Shown here one piece after another: positions 14,665-30,220 of a stretch of 64,000 nt of DNA. The stretch covers positions 763,693-827,692 of the forward strand of contig NW_027192199.1 in assembly GCF_041956535.1 (NCBI RefSeq), read 5' to 3'. Position numbers and translations under genes: made by a program. Under the pieces are notes generated by a model. It did not search any database. It saw only the letters and a program-made list of their open reading frames with translations, and was not told the DNA's origin. Each line of letters starts with the position of its first letter. The stretch's first letter is position 1. The stretch comes from Calcarisporiella thermophila CBS 279.70 (taxonomy: Eukaryota; Fungi; Calcarisporiellomycota).

Positions 14665-15075
14665 AAAAACAGATGGAGCAATCATTTCAAAAAAATTCAT
14701 GCTTTTAATATGAAAAATAAAATAAGAATGGATGTGGTTGCGTCCTTACCGTGATCGCCTGCCATGTTGGATATTTTGTTGCAATTTGAAAATGAGATGG
14801 CTACTTTATTACTTGCCCTGGCTCCAAAAAAAACATTACTGCGCCTCACTTATGAACAATAATGCAGCAATAAATTGCGGCCAAATTCTACGGCCGAATT
14901 TACAGCCGAATATGTCTTACTACTTACTCTCTTAATTGAAGGAAACGGATAAAAATTCATATGCTGGGCGGCGCAGTTATTGTTGTCAAAGGTAACAAGA
15001 ATTATCCCGAAAGAGCTATGAAAGCGAGTGTTCTTGTTAGCTTCAACGATTCAAACCAGGGTGACTCTACACATA

Positions 15076-16290
15076 ATGGAATCTCTACCGATACCAACAC
15101 AACCGGCCAATGGCCATAAAAACTATCCGAGGAAAACAACTTATAACATCGGGACTAGAAAATCTGCTTTAGCCCTTGCCCAGACTCACCACATCTTACG
15201 CGAGCTCCAGCGAACGTATCCTACAAATCAGTTTTCCATCACTGCTATGTCGACCACTGGTGATAAAGTGCTTGAAGTTGCATTATTTAAAATCGGTGAA
15301 AAATCACTTTTTACAAAAGAGCTGGAAGTTGCCTTGTTACGGGGGAAAATCGATTTCATTGTTCATAGTTTAAAAGATTTGCCGACAACGTTACCAGAAG
15401 GACTTGAAGTCGGGGCAATAACTGAGCGAGAGAATCCAAGAGATGCGGTAGTATTTCGTGAGAAGTGGCGAGGATATAGACTTGAAAAGTTACCAGAAGG
15501 ATCGGTCGTTGGAACAAGTAGCGTACGAAGAATTGCTCAATTAAGACATCTTTTCCCTCATTTGATTTTCAAGGATATCGTAAGTACAAAAAAATGATAG
15601 GCTTAATCCAATTTACAACGCAAGTGATAACTCGAGCTTATACTGATTTCTTTTTTAAACTCTTCTCTCCACCCTTCAAAGAGAGGCAATGTGTAAGGAT
15701 ATCTCCATATTTTTCTTACAAACCGTTCCATTAACTTTCCCATGTGTAATAGCAATACCCGGCTTTCAAAACTCGATGCACCTGATGGACCTTACGATGC
15801 TATTATCCTTGCTGTTGCTGGTCTGAATCGTCTGCATCTTTCCGATCGCATCAGTTATGTTTTAGAGGAGATGCTGCCTGCAGTTGGGCAAGGGGCTCTT
15901 GGAATCGAATGTCGTGCTGCAGATGAAGCAACTAAACTACTGCTCCAGTCGCTTGACCATCCTGAAACACGCCTGGCATGCATTGCAGAACGAGCACTAA
16001 TGCGCTATCTGGAAGGGGGTTGCTCCGTTCCTATTGGTGTGGATTCAAAGGTTGAAGAGGGACAGAGACTTATTCTTAAAGGTTTAGTGGCTAGTTTGGA
16101 TGGGAAGCGTGTGGTAAGAGCAGAGGCTGCGTGTGATCTTAGCAGCGATGGAGGAGTATTAGCTTCAACTGGAAAAGCTCGAGAACGCAATGATAAAGAA
16201 GCTGAGACGTTGGGCATAGAGGTTGCAAAATCGTTAAAAGAAAATGGGGCAGAGGAAATATTAAACGAGCTCACTTCTACAAAGACATAA
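15076..16290 (+). CDS. HEM3: Porphobilinogen deaminase (hydroxymethylbilane synthase); exons 15076-15579, 15682-15692, 15753-16290
   Basis: [58 protein letters not shown] with cofactor-binding Cys. Confidence 0.97.
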
Positions 16291-16963: not shown

Positions 16964-19214
16964 TCATCGCCTTACACGTCGTCGAGTCTTAGCTGTAGCA
17001 AATTTCCGTTCACCGGTATTCGGCGGCGCAAACCCGATTGCTGAAGTGGCCCCGAAGTTAACAGCCCCGGCTGGTGTTGCGTTAAACCCACCGACCATTC
17101 CTCCAGAAGCGCTAGAGGCACCAAATCCACCATTTGCCTGGCTTGGCGTATTGAAACCACTTCCAAACGTGAAGCTTTGCTGCGGTTGCTGTTGCTGCTG
17201 CTGCGGTTGCCCAACAGGCTGACCGAATCCTCCACTAGGGGCTCCGAAGCTAGGAGTCATCGTGCCACTGCTGGATCCAAATTGGAATGGGGTAGGAGGG
17301 TTGCTAGTTCCAAAAGTAGGAGTATTAGTGGTATTGGAGGAAGCCCCGAATGTGAATACTGGAGGATTCGAGTTATTTGAACTAAATAAGGGCGGATTTG
17401 TATTCGCGTTAGTAGGCTGCCCAAATGTGAGTGAGAGGTTGGAAGATCCTGTGCTAGTAGCTGTCGAAATTTGAGGTTGTTGCTGAGTTTGGCCGTTAGA
17501 GAACGGTTTGCTACCGAATGCAAAGCCTCCCTCTGTGCTTGTAGAGTTTGCATTGGTCGCCGACCCAAACGAGAAAACAGGTGGCTTTGCTGCATTGGTA
17601 GTGGAGGTAGCATCTTTTGTACCACCAAAATTAAAAGAGAAAGGCGCGTTGGTTGAGTTGAGTGTGCTCGTCTTTTCCCCCTCTGAAGTGCTTTGTGTAG
17701 ACCCAAATGTCAAGGGTACAGGGGTAACGTGCGGTTGCGTACCATTAGGCAGAGATGTTGCTTGATTACCTGTCGAAGGAGCGCCAAAGGTGAATGATGG
17801 AGTAGTAGTGGCAGTTGAGGAGGAGGTAGAGGGCAAATTGGCCTGAGTTGCGCCAAATGTAAATGGGGGTTTTGGTGGCCCGCTCACAACATCGGCGGTT
17901 GTGGATATTACAGAAGAGGCGGTGATGCCTAGGGAGGCGGGAGTGGTAGTAGAAGAGGAGGATGGTAGGATATCTGTTGACGTTGGTTTACTCGAGTCAG
18001 GTGCACCAAAAGTAAACGTAGAGGATTTCATCACAGTCGAGGTCTCAGTCGCCGTAGTCAAAGATTTCATGTCATTATTAGGGGTGCCAAAAATGAATGG
18101 AGAGATCTTAGTTGGTTCTGATGTGGCCGAAGGTGTTACCTCAACTGTGGTCACTGGCTGAGTGGTAGAGGTGCCAAACTTGAAGGTAGGTAGCTTAACA
18201 GAATCGGTGGTTGAGGGAGTCGCGTCGGAAGTACTGGTGTGCCCAAAAGAGAATGAAGGTATTTTCTGGGCAGAATTATCAGCGGTTGTGCCAGAGAGTG
18301 CTCCGCTAGTGGCTGGGGTCCCGAAAGTAAATGAGGCACCCGCATTTGTTTTAGATGCGTCTTCACTAGATCCTGGAGTAGCAGAAGGAGCTCCAAATGA
18401 AAGTGAAGGAGGTTTAGACTCTCCCGATGTAGTATTAGGAGTTCCAAAGCCGAAAAGTGGTTTAATATCCCCTTTTTTCTCCTTCGTATCTTGCGATTGA
18501 GATACAGCTGTAGCCGAGCCAAATGACAACTTTGGTACATCCGATGTTGATGATTTCTCGGAACTGGTGGGGGTTTTTTCTGCAGCAGAAGATGCCGAGG
18601 ACGACGCAGCTGTTGCTCCAAAAGTGAAAATCCCTGTTGCTGACTCAGTGCTACTTGTAGAAATGCCTTTACCAGTCAATGATCCGAGGATTGCGGGTGC
18701 ATTTTTCTCCTCAGTTTGGATTTTATTTTCTTTGTCCTCACTCCCTGATGCTGGAACAGCTATTGGCCCACCATTTCCGTCCATCGTTCCATTAATTGCT
18801 ATACGCTTCGCTTCTCTCTCTTGTACCTCCCGTTCCTCACTTTCATCTAGAGCAAAACGTCGTTTTAAAGATGGATCAGAGCTGATCTTGTCTGCGCGTT
18901 TTTTAGCATCCTCCAGCTCACGCCTTAGTTCCGCCTGTCTTGCTGCAACTAGAGCATGGCGCATCTGCGGTTTAGGCGAGCCAAGCTTCAAGCGACCAAA
19001 TTTATTGATACGCTTACTCGCTGTATTTAGCGGAGGAGTATAGTCCATATAGTAATAAGGGGAACGCGGCGTGCGCGGTGTCCCCGACGCGGTCTGTATA
19101 TGATGGAGCATCGATGTTAATATAGACGTATATTTGAATAATAGTTGGCCAAAGAAATCCAGGATTAAATTGAAATTATTCTTCATATACCTTCAGTATT
19201 GGTGTTGTTGACAT
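16964..19214 (-). CDS. FG-repeat nucleoporin, Nup1/Nup153-like (short first exon 19214-19191, then 19093-16964)
   Basis: Many FTFG/FSFG repeats; C-terminal basic motif RKFATAKTRRRVRR resembling the karyopherin-binding tail of Nup153/Nup1. Confidence 0.85.
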
Positions 19215-23824: not shown

Positions 23825-25165
23825 ATGAAATCTTGCATAGTTCTCTCTTTGATCACCATTGGTTTGGCAACCCTTGCGTCTGGTCTCCCCATCGACAAGC
23901 GTGGGGTGGTGGATGGGTCCGTGAATAACGCTAAAGTACTCAGCAAGATCGGCTTGTTGAATGCCATGGTCAATTCGAACCCCCAGGATTTGGAAAATAA
24001 CAACAGTAACACTCGTGCTCAAGGCAAGAAGAACAACGCAGCTGGTCAAGAAATCAAGCGTGGCCTTATTGATGGATCTCTTAATGATGCCCATATCATT
24101 GACAACATCAGCATCCTAAACGCTCTGGCAAATTCTAGCCCCCAGACCCTCCAGAATAACAACGCCAACACGCGTGCGGCCGGGAAGAAGAATAACGCCG
24201 CCGGTCAGTACGAGAAGCGCCACAACCGCCATTGGGACGGCGACAATATCTACGACGATGCTCACGTCCTAGATCACAATAACATTGCCGACACGAACAT
24301 CAACTCGGACACCGTCTACGTTTCGAATGACAATGCAAACACACGCGCGCGTGGAAAGGGCAACAACTCGGCCAATGCTAAACGTGGGCTCATTGATGGA
24401 TCGCTTAATGACCCGCATGTTCTCGATAATCTTAACGTGCTCAATGCGTTGGTGAACTCGAATCCTCAGCAACTGCAAAACAATAATGCCAACACTCGCG
24501 CGGACGGTTGCAAGAATAATGCCGGTGGACAATATATGAAGCGCAACAATAACTGCCGTCGTGGTATCATCGATGGTTCGCTGAATGATGCGCATGTGCT
24601 AGCGGGTGTCAATGTCCTAAACGCGTTGGTGAACTCAAATCCTCAACAAGGAGAACAAAATAACGCCAACACCCGCGCGGAGGGCAAAAAGAATAATGCC
24701 CTTGGACAGGTCATTCGCCGTAGTTTCAGCGACGATATATACTCTGATGCGCATGTACTTGACCACAATAACGTAGCAAACACCAACATCAACTCTGACA
24801 CTGTGTACGTCTCCAACAGTAACGCCAACACCCGTGCTCGTGGGAAAGGAAACAACTCGGCAGACGCCAAAGTTAAACGCGGCAGCGCTGACAATATCTA
24901 TGATGATGCCCATTTGCTCGATCACAATGATATTGCAAACACAAACATCAATTCAGACACCGTGTATGTATCAAACAACAACGTTAACTCGCGCGCACGC
25001 GGTAAAGATAACAACTCTGCCAGCTACAAGGTCCGTCGTGTCCTGCTTCGTCGCCATGACCACCACAGCAAATCCAAGAAGGCGCACGATGCCCATGAAT
25101 CCAAATCGCACGAATCAAAGAGCTCGTCCAAGGAGGATGCATCAGTTGCTGCTGACCAGATTTAA
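23825..25165 (+). CDS. Secreted Kex2-processed repeat protein (KEP) with seven ~51-53 aa Asn-rich repeats
   Basis: Signal MKSCIVLSLITIGLATLASG-LP; repeats separated by KR/RR; four type A (GLIDGSLNDAH...NNANTRAxGKKNN) and three type B (DNIYDDAHVLDHN...NSDTVYVSN.NANTRARGKGNNSA). Confidence 0.9.
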   Translation: MKSCIVLSLITIGLATLASGLPIDKRGVVDGSVNNAKVLSKIGLLNAMVNSNPQDLENNNSNTRAQGKKNNAAGQEIKRGLIDGSLNDAHIIDNISILNALANSSPQTLQNNNANTRAAGKKNNAAGQYEKRHNRHWDGDNIYDDAHVLDHNNIADTNINSDTVYVSNDNANTRARGKGNNSANAKRGLIDGSLNDPHVLDNLNVLNALVNSNPQQLQNNNANTRADGCKNNAGGQYMKRNNNCRRGIIDGSLNDAHVLAGVNVLNALVNSNPQQGEQNNANTRAEGKKNNALGQVIRRSFSDDIYSDAHVLDHNNVANTNINSDTVYVSNSNANTRARGKGNNSADAKVKRGSADNIYDDAHLLDHNDIANTNINSDTVYVSNNNVNSRARGKDNNSASYKVRRVLLRRHDHHSKSKKAHDAHESKSHESKSSSKEDASVAADQI

Positions 25166-28305: not shown

Positions 28306-30220
28306 TTATTTCCAGCTTCCTCCCAGATACGGCCAACTAACATATCTTGAGGAAAAATAGAGGCAAGCAGCCGTCACGCCCGCAAACATCATGAGCATTC
28401 CCTTGCCGAGCCATATTCCCCACAGTGAATATTCTTTCGAGCCGGAGCGAGGTTTGCGTGGAGAGGTACGGGGCGCGGGAGGGACACGTTTCTGCATGAC
28501 TACAGAGTCGTCGATTGTGATAGGTGGATGGTGCAGCGCTAGGGGATCTCGCGGGTTTGCAGCAGAGGAGCGCATCAGTATTGCCGCAGCCTCCGTCACT
28601 GATCGTGGATAGGGTCGTCCCTCGTCCACCATCCCATCGTGGTATACTTTTTCTGACAATTGGGAGTCGGCCACCGTGGTACTGGCCGAAGTAAAAGTAG
28701 ACCGATGTGTACGCCGCCACTCCACGAATTTATCGGCGGTAGCTTGGCGCAGAAAATTAACGTGGGTGTGGAAGAGCATTGTGTAGAGCTTGGAGAGCTC
28801 TGAGGAGTGCAGCTGTGGGAAGAGATTGGGTTGGGGATTGGGTGATTCATGGTGCGAGGAAGGGAGAGTGGCTAGGGGGGGATTGGGTGGTTGGGAAGAA
28901 ATCGACTCAACCGAGCGAACACCTTCCTCCAATGGGGCTGCCTCGGATACCATGGTCGACACCGCAAAAGGTGGGCAATTTGCATCGTTGGGAGATGCAC
29001 AACCGAAATCGAAAAATTGGATTCCATGCTCGCGAAGGTCGTGCAATACCTTCTGCTTTAGTTCTGCAACTTCGTGTGAAGAGATAGTATCTGCTTTGAC
29101 AATGATCGGGATTAGATTGACAACGTGGTGGAGACTGCGCATATACTCAATGTCGACGGGTTTGAGGCGGTGTAGAATTAGATAGAGACACGCATCCACA
29201 TGGGTGTGTCCTCCGCTGCCTGTGGTGAGAAAACGTGCAAGCTCGGGGCCATTGGGTGCAGACTCGGAAAAGAATCCGTTGGTGCGCTTGAATTGTTGGA
29301 TCACATAGTCGACAATGGGGGCGATGCACAATTTAGCCTGTGGCATAAGAAAAATAGGATAAGAATTCTCGTATACGAAGAGCGTGGTGGATAGACACCT
29401 ACATCCAAGTGTGTTCCGTAGCCCACCGTATCCACAAAGCAAATGTTTTTCACCAGAACGCTATTCCGGTCGTGGTCCGGATAATTGTTGGAATGTAACC
29501 ACGGGGGCAGGACCATTGTGCTTGCATAAAGGAGATTGGCTACCCCACCGCTACTTTCATGTATGTCACTGGCCAGTATATCAGGGCCACCCATGAGTGT
29601 GTGAATGAGCTGGGTTTTTCCAATGCCTACAGGAGAGCATAAAGGGAGCTTAGAGCCAATTACATTAATGATGAATATTGAGTCCGCTTACCAGTATCGC
29701 CACAAACTAGTACCCTCATGTAGCCAAGATTTTGGCCCTCATTTGTTGGATGCTTAGCCTCGGCAATGGTTAGAGTAGGCATCACAAGGCAACTTTCAAA
29801 ACCACTTTGTAGCTGATCCAATTCCATTCCTGGAACATTCTCATCACCCACAGGAAGCGAAGAGATGCTCAATGGGCTCCCAGGGGTCGTCGGGCAAGAG
29901 ATAAGGGTACGTCTGAGCTGGTTCAGCAAGGGGGTATCGTCTTCGACTGAAGCCCCACCTTGATTCTTCTTTTGCTGTAAGTATCGTTTCTCGTCCATAT
30001 CTTCTTGACTGCTCGTGGTAGCGCGGGTAGAGAAGTCGCGCGATGGAGGAGAGAGCTTTGCTGAATATTCATCATCACTTTCTGTGGACAGCGTCTGGAA
30101 GCTACGCACTCCATAGGACTCATCGTCTGGAGTAGGCTCCATGGCTACGAGCGAAGAGGCAGACGACTGCCGTTTGGGCGGAGAAATAATTGTGAATTGG
30201 GTCCCCGGATGCTGATGCAT
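28306..30220 (-). CDS. Atypical septin-like GTPase with C-terminal hydrophobic helix (3 exons)
   Basis: MRVLVCGDTG/IGKT P-loop, ICFVDTVGYG (G3), HVDACLYLILHRLKPVDIEYM, NLIPIIVKADT (G4); tail LWGIWLGKGMLMMFAGVTAACLYF. Confidence 0.85.

What the first reader, a model, noticed from the sequence alone, without database searches (positions are those of the whole stretch)
23825..25165. Two-type Asn-rich Kex2 repeat precursor: candidate hetero-assembling repellent or functional amyloid
Seen: a signal peptide, then seven ~51-53 aa units each bounded by KR/RR, in the order A-A-B-A-A-B-B. A and B share a frame (D-x3-DAHVLD-x2-N-x2-N-x3-NS ... NNANTRA-x-GK-x-NN) but are distinct subfamilies. A is aliphatic (GLIDGSLND, VLNALVNSNPQQ). 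B is acidic with His/Tyr (DNIYDD, DHNNIA, NSDTVYVS). The nucleotide repeats are far more diverged than the protein repeats, which suggests selection on peptide sequence. Known: Kex2 cleaves after KR/RR; Ustilago Rep1 repellents are made this way and form amyloid; Asn ladders typify curli and FapC. Inference: one gene releases two related cross-beta peptides at a fixed 4:3 ratio, possibly as a hyphal or spore coat in a lineage where such a system is not known to me.
Basis: partly seen in the sequence, partly recalled or inferred. Interest (0 to 1): 0.8.

Follow-up and report, generated by a model that had tools for sequence, protein, structure and literature searches.

The report
Fungal polyprotein releasing bacterial-type secreted peptides
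A gene of the heat-loving fungus Calcarisporiella thermophila encodes a secreted precursor built to be cut into seven Asn-rich peptides of about 51 residues; the same peptide is made singly by Streptomyces and cyanobacteria, so the fungus probably acquired a bacterial peptide and multiplied it about ninety-fold, but what the peptide does is unknown.

Summary
Window 23825-25165 (+) is an intact 446-aa ORF with a signal peptide, a short pro-piece ending in KR, and seven 53-55-aa units bounded by KR/RR in the order A-A-B-A-A-B-B. Synonymous sites between units are saturated while the peptide sequence is conserved.

The gene has Kex2-processed repeat protein (KEP) architecture. It belongs to a family of about 20 genes and at least 90 units in this genome, which other first-stage readers also noted on other DNA.

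The new result is that the 49-aa core has no Pfam, NCBIfam or PDB match but has clear single-unit homologues elsewhere:
- Streptomyces, Kribbella and Phytomonospora, with a Sec signal.
- Cyanobacteria, with a double-glycine leader; one gene lies between HlyD and a C39-peptidase ABC exporter.
- High-GC bacteria, as leaderless Met-Gly forms.
- Orbilia and Dactylella.

Identity reaches 86% between fungus and Streptomyces. The bacterial mature peptide is co-linear with the fungal KR-bounded unit at both ends. This supports peptide release and points to horizontal transfer followed by expansion.

The amyloid/repellent reading and A+B hetero-assembly remain untested. The peptides are hydrophilic and acidic, and pure-A and pure-B genes also exist. 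Function is open: extracellular self-associating matrix peptide versus bacteriocin-like peptide.

The parts
23825..25165 (+). Complete intronless CDS (446 aa plus stop) of the Kex2-processed repeat precursor
23825..23884 (+). Signal peptide, aa 1-20 (hydrophobic core, small residues before the predicted cut ..LASG)
   Evidence: Read from the sequence. All paralogues start the same way. No SignalP tool was available.
23885..23902 (+). Short pro-piece LPIDKR ending in the first dibasic site
23903..24061 (+). Unit A1, aa 27-79 (49-aa core plus EIKR)
   Evidence: profile score 72.5 bits
24062..24220 (+). Unit A2, aa 80-132
   Evidence: 77.8 bits
24221..24385 (+). Unit B1, aa 133-187 (N-terminal HNRHWD extension, then the B core)
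   Evidence: (55.3 bits)
24386..24544 (+). Unit A3, aa 188-240. It carries Cys229 in the core tail (..DGCKNN..).
   Evidence: (76.3 bits)
24545..24562 (+). Spacer NNNCRR, aa 241-246. Its Cys244 is the likely disulfide partner of Cys229.
   Evidence: Core-Cys and linker-Cys co-occur across the family.
24563..24721 (+). Unit A4, aa 247-299
   Evidence: 73.8 bits
24722..24880 (+). Unit B2, aa 300-352
   Evidence: (54.5 bits)
24881..25039 (+). Unit B3, aa 353-405
   Evidence: (52.8 bits)
25040..25054 (+). Spacer VLLRR, aa 406-410
25055..25162 (+). C-terminal His/Lys/Ser-rich tail, aa 411-446. It is not part of the repeat.
   Evidence: Similar His-rich tails occur in paralogues.

Best explanation
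The gene encodes a secreted polyprotein with KEP architecture.

Proposed steps:
1. The signal peptide is removed in the ER.
2. A kexin-type convertase in the late Golgi cuts after each KR/RR, and a Kex1-type carboxypeptidase trims the basic residues.
3. Four A-type and three B-type peptides of about 51 residues are secreted, plus small spacers and a His-rich tail.

The released unit is a 49-aa module with G1, D4, S25, N32, N34, N36 and G41 nearly invariant. It is not fungus-specific. It belongs to an unnamed family that bacteria make as single peptides, with a Sec signal in actinomycetes, a double-glycine leader in cyanobacteria, or no leader at all.

The most economical history is that a Calcarisporiella ancestor acquired the peptide from a bacterium. 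It was then cast into the fungal polyprotein format and amplified to about 20 genes and at least 90 units, with B as a derived, Calcarisporiella-specific subtype.

What is shown: the anatomy, the selection on peptide sequence, the family, the homology and the co-linear termini.

What is inferred: cleavage (I put it at about 0.8), the direction of transfer (about 0.7) and the function.

My best guess for function is a bulk extracellular peptide that is disordered alone and acts by binding or self-associating at the wall or in the matrix, with the variable tails supplying surface chemistry (about 0.35). A bacteriocin-like competition peptide is nearly as likely (about 0.3).
For: Anatomy and selection:
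- ORF structure, units and dibasic sites.
- 72 of 75 unit starts in the family follow KR/RR.
- Six loci in the genome carry a kexin P-domain.

Family in this genome:
- At least 90 unit matches and 21 ORFs, all with a signal peptide and a pro-piece ending in Arg.

Homologues elsewhere:
- A profile search of 1.84 billion proteins gave 58 hits at E<=1e-3.
- These include single-unit peptides named from Streptomyces, Orbilia oligospora and Dactylella.
- Ten actinomycete genome loci encode 76-93-aa pre-peptides that begin ..AHA|G or ..ASA|G. The Streptomyces ones end ..GQH[EGQST].
- The GG-leader homologue P0020 sits between a HlyD gene and a C39-peptidase ABC exporter. IMG annotates that exporter as a bacteriocin exporter.
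- Neighbour genes place the P0023-type host among filamentous cyanobacteria.

Identity and history:
- Window A units are 65-67% identical to P0020.
- The last unit of paralogue L050 is 86% identical to the peptide of Streptomyces sp. AC550 and ends at the same residue.
- A single origin of the fungal units is not rejected (AU p 0.47).
- In bacteria the gene is rare and single-copy, found in 7 of 401 Streptomyces species genomes. One copy is on a plasmid.

Structure:
- The monomer is predicted disordered (pLDDT 56).
- Paralogue tails are rich in His, Tyr/Gly/Lys, or Asp/Trp.
Against: - No peptide, RNA or protein data exist here. No RNA run was listed, so expression and cleavage are not shown.
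- Some bacterial members are leaderless, and one sits directly behind an ArsR-type regulator gene. Others carry the module inside larger proteins (P0046, P0051, P0059). The module is therefore not always a free secreted peptide.
- The tree has only 49 columns and cannot fix the direction or number of transfers.
- For a matrix or coat role: the peptides are hydrophilic and acidic and not amphipathic. The gene is far too rare in Streptomyces to be a core morphogenetic coat. Hydrophobin-like genes exist in this genome.
Confidence: 0.6

Rival explanations
1. Bacteriocin-like competition peptides. The released peptides are antimicrobial or growth-inhibiting toward bacteria or other fungi. The polyprotein format serves to produce them in quantity.
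For: - A homologue lies in a canonical HlyD / GG-leader peptide / C39-ABC exporter locus.
- Distribution is patchy and transfer-prone: 7 of 401 Streptomyces, a plasmid copy and chromosome-end positions.
- Leaderless forms exist, as in leaderless bacteriocins.
- From general knowledge, class II microcins are likewise anionic and hydrophilic.
Against: - No conserved neighbour, and hence no immunity gene, lies within 3 kb in nine actinomycete loci, even among 40-aa ORFs.
- The peptides are acidic, hydrophilic and not amphipathic.
- Cross-kingdom identity of 60-86% is unusual for antimicrobial peptides.
- GG-leader peptides of cyanobacteria are not necessarily antibiotics (EbfG1-4, PMC4997328).
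Confidence: 0.3
2. A and B are two cross-beta peptides that co-assemble at a 4:3 ratio into a functional amyloid or repellent-like hydrophobic coat on hyphae or spores.
For: - Asn makes up 20-24% of the units, with near-invariant Asn/Gly positions.
- The monomer is predicted disordered.
- Copy number is high.
- Rep1 is a precedent (PMC3133707).
- All named hosts are filamentous organisms.
Against: - GRAVY is -0.4 to -1.3 and the beta-type hydrophobic moment is low. Periodicity is 3 residues, not 2.
- There is no internal repeat or curli-like motif.
- Pure-A and pure-B genes exist, so the ratio is not fixed at the genome level.
- Bacterial homologues are single-type.
- Hydrophobin-like genes are present.
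Confidence: 0.2
3. Signalling peptides. The units are ligands, pheromone-like or interspecies signals, sensed by a receptor, as proposed for many KEPs.
For: - KEP architecture is the route to alpha-factor and was proposed for new signalling peptides (PMC6339444).
- Strong sequence conservation of a disordered peptide fits a ligand.
Against: - Ninety units with very diverse tails are far more than a signal needs.
- No receptor or conserved partner gene lies next to the bacterial homologues.
- Leaderless cytoplasmic forms exist.
Confidence: 0.1
4. Metal-handling peptides. The Asp/Asn/His-rich units and His-run tails bind Zn, Cu, Ni or Ca outside the cell.
For: - His runs follow many units in paralogues, and the window gene has a His-rich tail.
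- One leaderless bacterial homologue lies 4 nt behind an ArsR-family regulator gene and next to a metal or siderophore-type ABC importer.
- Many conserved oxygen-donor residues are present.
Against: - The window's A units have 0-1 His.
- His tails are absent from the bacterial peptides.
- The conserved core has no recognised metal motif.
Confidence: 0.08
5. An uncleaved repeat protein. The dibasic sites are not used, and the 45 kDa protein is a wall or adhesin repeat protein.
For: Cleavage has not been observed, and the expected number of internal KR/RR in the cores is too low for their absence to be informative.
Against: - Every unit start follows Arg, 72 of 75 after KR/RR.
- Linkers vary from 2 to more than 100 residues while the cores are conserved.
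- Homologues elsewhere are single free units with the same ends.
Confidence: 0.05

Closest known systems
Kex2-processed repeat proteins (KEPs) of fungi (Le Marquer 2019, PMC6339444; Umemura 2020, PMC7329392)
   Same: Signal peptide, short pro-piece, and tandem peptide cores separated by KR/RR. Several such genes per genome. Already reported as common in Mucoromycota, about 9 per strain.
   Different: - The cores are long, about 51 aa.
- Two diverged core types share one precursor.
- The core is homologous to bacterial single-peptide genes.
- The family has expanded to about 20 genes and 90 units.
- Calcarisporiella does not occur in the main text of the 2020 survey.
Ustilago maydis Rep1 repellents (PMC3133707)
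   Same: One pre-pro-protein is cut by Kex2 into about 11 peptides of tens of residues that act outside the cell.
   Different: No sequence relationship was found. The 58 hits of the exhaustive profile search were the Calcarisporiella paralogues, small single-unit peptides, Orbilia and Dactylella proteins, two plant ORFs and one borderline unrelated 1052-aa protein; none resembles a repellent precursor. Rep1 peptides are amphipathic and amyloid-forming. These peptides are hydrophilic and acidic, and their assembly is untested.
Double-glycine-leader peptides exported by C39-peptidase ABC transporters (class II bacteriocins and microcins; cyanobacterial clusters, PMC3140520)
   Same: True homologues of the unit (P0020, P0023, P0025) have GG-type leaders. 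P0020 lies between HlyD and the C39-ABC exporter. The mature peptide starts at the same Gly as the fungal unit.
   Different: The fungal gene uses the ER/Kex2 route. No antimicrobial activity or immunity gene is known for any member. The P0025 leader scores just under the TIGR01847 cut-off (13.2 against 15.7 bits).
EbfG1-4 of Synechococcus elongatus (PMC4997328)
   Same: Small GG-leader proteins exported by a C39 peptidase transporter that act as biofilm or matrix factors rather than antibiotics. This is a precedent for the matrix reading.
   Different: Not homologous. The mature EbfG N-termini quoted in the paper are unrelated to the unit.
Streptomyces chaplins and rodlins
   Same: Small Sec-secreted actinomycete peptides of about 50 aa. 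They are the nearest named clusters in the ESM Atlas feature search, but only at 0.79-0.81, a chance-level score.
   Different: No Pfam ChpA-C or Rodlin match. Chaplins are hydrophobic and found throughout Streptomyces. This peptide is hydrophilic and occurs in under 2% of species sampled.

Membership tests
KEP (Kex2-processed repeat protein) | N-terminal secretion signal | tested here: met
   Hydrophobic N-terminus MKSCIVLSLITIGLATLASG by inspection. The same design occurs in all paralogues. No SignalP run was possible.
KEP (Kex2-processed repeat protein) | Three or more similar peptide cores separated by KR/RR sites | tested here: met
   Seven units are bounded by KR/RR. Across the family, 72 of 75 unit starts follow KR/RR.
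KEP (Kex2-processed repeat protein) | Kexin-type convertase available in the organism | tested here: met
   Six loci with the P_proprotein domain score over the Pfam cut-off.
KEP (Kex2-processed repeat protein) | Peptides actually released | not testable with these tools
   Needs peptidomics. The only indirect support is that the termini are co-linear with bacterial mature peptides.
Rep1-type repellents / functional amyloid | Sequence relationship to Rep1, curli or Fap repeats | tested here: not met
   No Pfam family at E<=10 other than noise. The profile search of 1.84 billion proteins returns no repellent, curli or Fap protein.
Rep1-type repellents / functional amyloid | Amphipathic or hydrophobic peptides | tested here: not met
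   GRAVY is -0.40 to -1.30. Net charge of cores is mostly -1 to -6. Mean hydrophobic moment over core residues 7-26 across the family is 0.11 at 100 degrees and 0.09-0.24 at 160-180 degrees.
Rep1-type repellents / functional amyloid | Forms amyloid fibrils at the cell surface | not testable with these tools
   Needs ThT, EM and wall extraction.
Class II bacteriocin / GG-leader peptide | Double-glycine leader and a dedicated C39-peptidase ABC exporter | tested here: inconclusive
   Met for the bacterial homologue P0020. Not applicable to the fungal gene. The leader model TIGR01847 is just below its cut-off for P0025.
Class II bacteriocin / GG-leader peptide | Adjacent immunity gene and antimicrobial activity | tested here: not met
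   No conserved neighbour gene in nine actinomycete loci. Activity itself is not testable here.
Dikaritin-type RiPP precursors (ustiloxin-like KEPs) | UstYa/DUF3328 oxidase near the precursor and short cores of 4-10 aa | tested here: not met
   No PF11807 match in the genome, though the control genomes gave no positive either. Window neighbours are porphobilinogen deaminase, a septin fragment and unknowns. The cores are about 51 aa.
Hydrophobins / chaplins | Pfam Hydrophobin, Hydrophobin_2 or ChpA-C domain | tested here: not met
   No such hit for the protein or its bacterial homologues.

The most novel reading that the evidence does not exclude
The 49-aa Asn-rich module is a previously unrecognised self-assembling extracellular building block. 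It is shared by horizontal transfer among filamentous actinomycetes, filamentous cyanobacteria and fungi, and needs a free N-terminal Gly.

Calcarisporiella domesticated it as Kex2 polyproteins that deliver set mixtures of core variants (A, B and others). These carry functional tails (His runs, Tyr/Gly/Lys, Asp/Trp) and build a tunable hyphal or spore matrix. That would be a new class of functional amyloid or biomaterial of bacterial origin.
Probability: 0.2. Interest if true: 0.85.

Novelty: new variant of a known kind. Interest (0 to 1): 0.66.

Why it matters
KEPs are known to be widespread, but almost none has a function or a traceable origin. Here the released peptide can be traced to bacteria.

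Four unrelated maturation routes expose the same N-terminal Gly of the same 49-aa module: Sec cleavage, GG-leader cleavage, Met excision and Kex2 cleavage. One Streptomyces peptide is 86% identical to a fungal unit.

This gives three things:
- A rare, clean case of a bacterial secreted peptide taken up by a eukaryote and re-engineered into a polyprotein.
- A new, unnamed protein family worth a Pfam entry.
- Simple test objects. A 51-aa unmodified peptide from culturable Streptomyces can be used to find the function of a roughly 90-copy fungal family.

An Asn-rich family kept under purifying selection in a thermophile, where Asn deamidates readily, also suggests that the Asn residues themselves do the work.

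Tried and rejected
- AlphaFold2 of one unit, with 35 and then 126 aligned sequences, gave pLDDT 56 with only a weak helix over residues 10-25. There was no usable model, so no fold search was run.
- Complex prediction on four copies of an A unit returned no verdict (score 0.01, alignment not used). This is not evidence either way.
- Pfam, NCBIfam and PDB sequence searches found no family. A weak NCBIfam hit of the window protein to the cyclophane RiPP AmcA (21.8 bits, cut-off 40, no stretch passing) is taken as Asn-rich composition noise.
- The ESM Atlas gave only unnamed actinomycete clusters at 0.88 and rodlin/chaplin at about 0.8, which is chance level.
- No RNA run was listed for the gene.
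- The search for related loci with the broad alignment failed for lack of a conserved stretch. A narrower alignment worked, but it only finds members with the exact NNNANTRA word.
- Conserved neighbours in actinomycete loci: none, at both 100-aa and 40-aa ORF cut-offs.
- Internal repeat within the unit (hhalign of the two halves): none.
- Avoidance of KR/RR inside cores: 2 observed against 2.9 expected, not informative.
- Multiple independent transfers: the tree intermixes fungal and bacterial units, but the AU test does not reject one fungal clade (p 0.47).
- Phage carriage: two IMG/VR contigs hold a Sec-type copy, but nine large ORFs of one contig gave no phage hallmark, so this was not claimed.
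- Short contigs for leaderless members P0036 and P0038 gave no context.
Full report
**1. The observation**

Window 23825-25165 (+) is an uninterrupted ORF of 446 codons. Cutting the product after every KR or RR gives these pieces:
- a 26-residue signal peptide plus pro-piece ending in DKR;
- seven units of 53-55 residues;
- two short spacers, NNNCRR and VLLRR;
- a 36-residue His/Lys/Ser-rich tail.

Asn is the commonest residue, 79 of 446.

Tandem Repeats Finder finds no DNA repeat in the gene. Between units, the proportion of synonymous differences is 0.60-0.98, effectively saturated. The non-synonymous proportion within a type is only 0.15-0.26. The repeats are therefore old and the peptide sequence is under purifying selection.

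**2. Organism and gene family**

The word-index protein search returned six paralogues, all named from Calcarisporiella thermophila. This is an early-diverging thermophilic fungus. The window is contig 9 of a 28-Mb assembly.

A profile of 35 units (A1) finds at least 90 units in that genome. I fetched the loci and re-scanned them, which gave 21 ORFs, two of them fragments next to N-runs, with 1-12 units each.

Every complete gene has the same plan: a signal peptide, a pro-piece ending in Arg, and then units. Of 75 unit starts that match the profile from its first position, 48 follow KR, 24 follow RR and 3 follow a single Arg. Linkers between cores range from 2 to more than 100 residues and differ widely in composition: His runs, Tyr/Gly/Lys, Asp/Trp, or Lys/Asn. 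The 49-aa cores stay conserved.

The genome has six loci with a kexin P-domain. This is the known KEP architecture, which surveys report as common in fungi, with about nine genes per Mucoromycota strain (PMC7329392; PMC6339444).

Other first-stage readers of this scan noted several of these paralogues on other DNA of the same genome. None had been followed up.

**3. A and B**

In a tree of 126 units, the three B units of the window gene group with the three units of one other gene, P0016 on contig 21. Support is SH-aLRT 93 and the stem is long.

The A units sit with the four units of P0009 on contig 28 and with bacterial sequences. So the genome has a pure-A gene and a pure-B gene, and the window gene is a mosaic of both types. 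B is a derived, Calcarisporiella-only subtype. Its best identity to any non-Calcarisporiella sequence is 47-49%, against 65-67% for A.

This weakens the idea that a fixed 4:3 ratio within one gene is the point of the design.

**4. The unit is not fungus-specific**

Pfam, NCBIfam and PDB sequence searches give nothing for the protein or the unit.

An exhaustive HMMER search of 1.84 billion representative proteins with the unit profile gave 58 hits at E<=1e-3 and 34 at E<=1e-10. Besides Calcarisporiella, these are mostly proteins of 50-150 residues with one unit. The named ones come from the following organisms:
- Streptomyces.
- Orbilia oligospora, with a signal peptide, a pro-piece, KKR and one unit.
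- Dactylella cylindrospora.
- Two plants.

A genome scan found ten actinomycete loci in Streptomyces, Kribbella and Phytomonospora. One is on a 1.18-Mb plasmid and one is frameshifted.

The Streptomyces genes encode pre-peptides of 76-84 aa (77 aa in the shortest reading). They have a Sec signal ending ..AHA, and the mature peptide starts at the unit's Gly1 and ends ..GQH plus one residue. This is the same ending as the fungal units have just before their KR.

Three homologues (P0020, P0023, P0025) instead have double-glycine-type leaders. P0020 lies between a HlyD-family gene and a C39-peptidase ABC exporter. IMG calls that exporter a bacteriocin/lantibiotic exporter with a double-glycine peptidase domain. 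Neighbour genes of the P0023 locus cluster at 90% identity or more with Coleofasciculus, Leptolyngbyaceae and other cyanobacteria.

A further set in high-GC bacteria is truly leaderless. The ORF begins Met-Gly, with only 9-19 in-frame codons back to the previous stop and a ribosome-binding site in place.

So Sec cleavage, GG-leader cleavage, Met excision and Kex2 cleavage all expose the same Gly1.

**5. Degree of conservation and history**

Across 126 aligned units, G1, D4, S25, N34, N36 and G41 are 96-100% conserved, and N32 is 91%.

The last unit of the 12-unit paralogue on contig 9 (L050) is 86% identical over 49 residues to the peptide of Streptomyces sp. AC550. It also ends the protein at the same residue.

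In Streptomyces the gene occurs in 7 of 401 species genomes sampled, always as one copy. It has no conserved neighbour within 3 kb.

Three points make acquisition by a Calcarisporiella ancestor, followed by expansion, the simplest history:
- The family is rare and patchy but spans two bacterial phyla.
- It is absent from all other fungal proteomes in the library except Orbiliales.
- It is present at about 90 copies in one fungus.

The tree intermixes fungal and bacterial units, but it has only 49 columns. An AU test does not reject a single fungal clade (p 0.47). Neither the number nor the direction of transfers is proven.

**6. What this says about mechanism**

The co-linearity of the bacterial mature peptide with the KR-bounded fungal unit is independent evidence that the unit is the functional product. 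It is not a domain of an uncleaved protein. I rate cleavage as likely (about 0.8) but not shown. No RNA run was listed and no peptide data are available.

The function of the module is unknown in any organism. The relevant facts are these:
- The monomer is predicted disordered (pLDDT 56; the Atlas model scores 0.49).
- The peptides are hydrophilic, with GRAVY -0.4 to -1.3, and the cores mostly carry a net charge of -1 to -6.
- The hydrophobic moment peaks at 120 degrees. This reflects a strict three-residue spacing of Leu/Ile at columns 7-22, not alpha or beta spacing.
- There is no internal repeat.
- There is no RiPP enzyme. UstYa was not found in the genome, and the window neighbours are ordinary genes.

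These facts do not fit a hydrophobic repellent-like coat or a cationic membrane-active peptide.

Points in favour of a bulk extracellular, self-associating or wall-binding material:
- the copy number;
- the conserved Asn/Gly pattern;
- tails of a kind seen in cross-linked or metal-coordinated materials;
- the filamentous lifestyle of all named hosts;
- the EbfG precedent that cyanobacterial GG-leader peptides can be matrix factors (PMC4997328).

Points in favour of a bacteriocin-like role:
- the HlyD / peptide / C39-ABC locus;
- the mobile, accessory distribution;
- the leaderless forms.

Points against a bacteriocin-like role:
- no immunity gene;
- the acidity of the peptides;
- the very high conservation.

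My estimates are matrix/self-association about 0.35 and competition peptide about 0.3. Signalling, metal handling and other roles share the rest.

**7. Comparison with the known, and novelty**

The architecture is a KEP, which is known. The family is not related to Rep1, curli/Fap, chaplins or hydrophobins, and those membership features were tested and not met.

What is new:
- an unnamed 49-aa module found across kingdoms;
- its delivery by four different maturation routes that converge on the same N-terminus;
- its probable bacterial origin and roughly 90-fold amplification in a fungus;
- a two-type mosaic precursor.

I classify it as a new variant of a known kind.

**8. Limits**

There is no experimental or expression evidence. 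Structure prediction failed, and the complex job gave no verdict, which is not evidence either way. Several family loci contain N-runs, so the census is a lower bound.

Noticed in passing
window 24512-24514 (Cys229) and 24554-24556 (Cys244); paralogues L041, L044, L045, L046, L048 and L050: Cys residues come in pairs. A Cys at about core column 42 (..GC.NN.. or ..GDCDN..) co-occurs with a Cys just before the next RR (..KR x1-4 C RR) in 16 of 18 units. An internal KR lies between the two Cys. This suggests either a disulfide-closed C-terminal loop or a two-chain product.
   Followed up: partly
G000:C25:89122-89352 (+); G000:C18:373349-375051 (-): Three matches to Pfam class I Hydrophobin, the best at 80 bits, in an early-diverging fungus. 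From my own knowledge, hydrophobins are usually regarded as a Dikarya trait.
   Followed up: no
G000:C5:1110032-1112179, C7:757755-759762, C17:258385-258645, C19:558104-558436: Six loci carry a kexin/furin P-domain. Two pairs are head-to-head neighbours, and one locus has two stop codons. This is an unusually large convertase set alongside a large KEP family.
   Followed up: no
L059 6792-7341 (also L060, L061): A leaderless 54-aa bacterial homologue starts 4 nt after an ArsR/HTH_20-type regulator gene. It lies next to a divergent FecCD/ABC/periplasmic-binding importer. A similar sequence upstream of the start (AACGTTCCAnCAAnCCGAAAGG) recurs in the unrelated contig L065.
   Followed up: partly
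L068 5001-5294; P0053: Single-unit ORFs with eukaryote-like signal peptides occur in plant assemblies. One is in Stipagrostis hirtigluma on an 8.1-Mb contig, isolated and intronless. The other is in Papaver nudicaule on a 9.6-kb contig. They could be real transfers, contaminant DNA or chance ORF calls; this is not resolved.
   Followed up: partly
L040 2699-3077: The Streptomyces sp. NPDC020096 copy is frameshifted after about 18 residues of the mature peptide, so it is a pseudogene.
   Followed up: no
P0046, P0055 and P0059 (C-terminal ~90 aa); P0018 and P0008 (C-terminal ~85 aa); P0051 (N-terminal ~215 aa): In some high-GC bacterial proteins the module is fused to another small domain with two Cys. 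P0046 has a weak Ig_VWA7 hit (E 0.057). In P0051 the module sits at the C-terminus of a larger protein.
   Followed up: no
L044 (P0003), L049 (P0033), L053, L054, L056, L043: Paralogue-specific tails follow each core: HGHHHH runs..KQGPEGFYYKGGHH.., an Asp/Trp-rich acidic linker, and a 52-residue His/Arg tail. P0004 also contains 39-aa half-units that keep only the ENRNANTK half of the core.
   Followed up: no
window 15028-16290 (+); 16964-19186 (-); 28306-29442 (-): The neighbours of the gene are ordinary: porphobilinogen deaminase in two exons, a 740-aa ORF with a weak bacterial alpha-2-macroglobulin MG5 hit, and a septin fragment. No modification enzyme or transporter lies next to the precursor.
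   Followed up: partly
L069 6001-6141; L070 5492-5722: Two IMG/VR 'viral' contigs with 62-73% GC carry a Sec-type copy. Nine large ORFs of L070 gave no phage hallmark in PHROGs, so the viral label is doubtful.
   Followed up: partly
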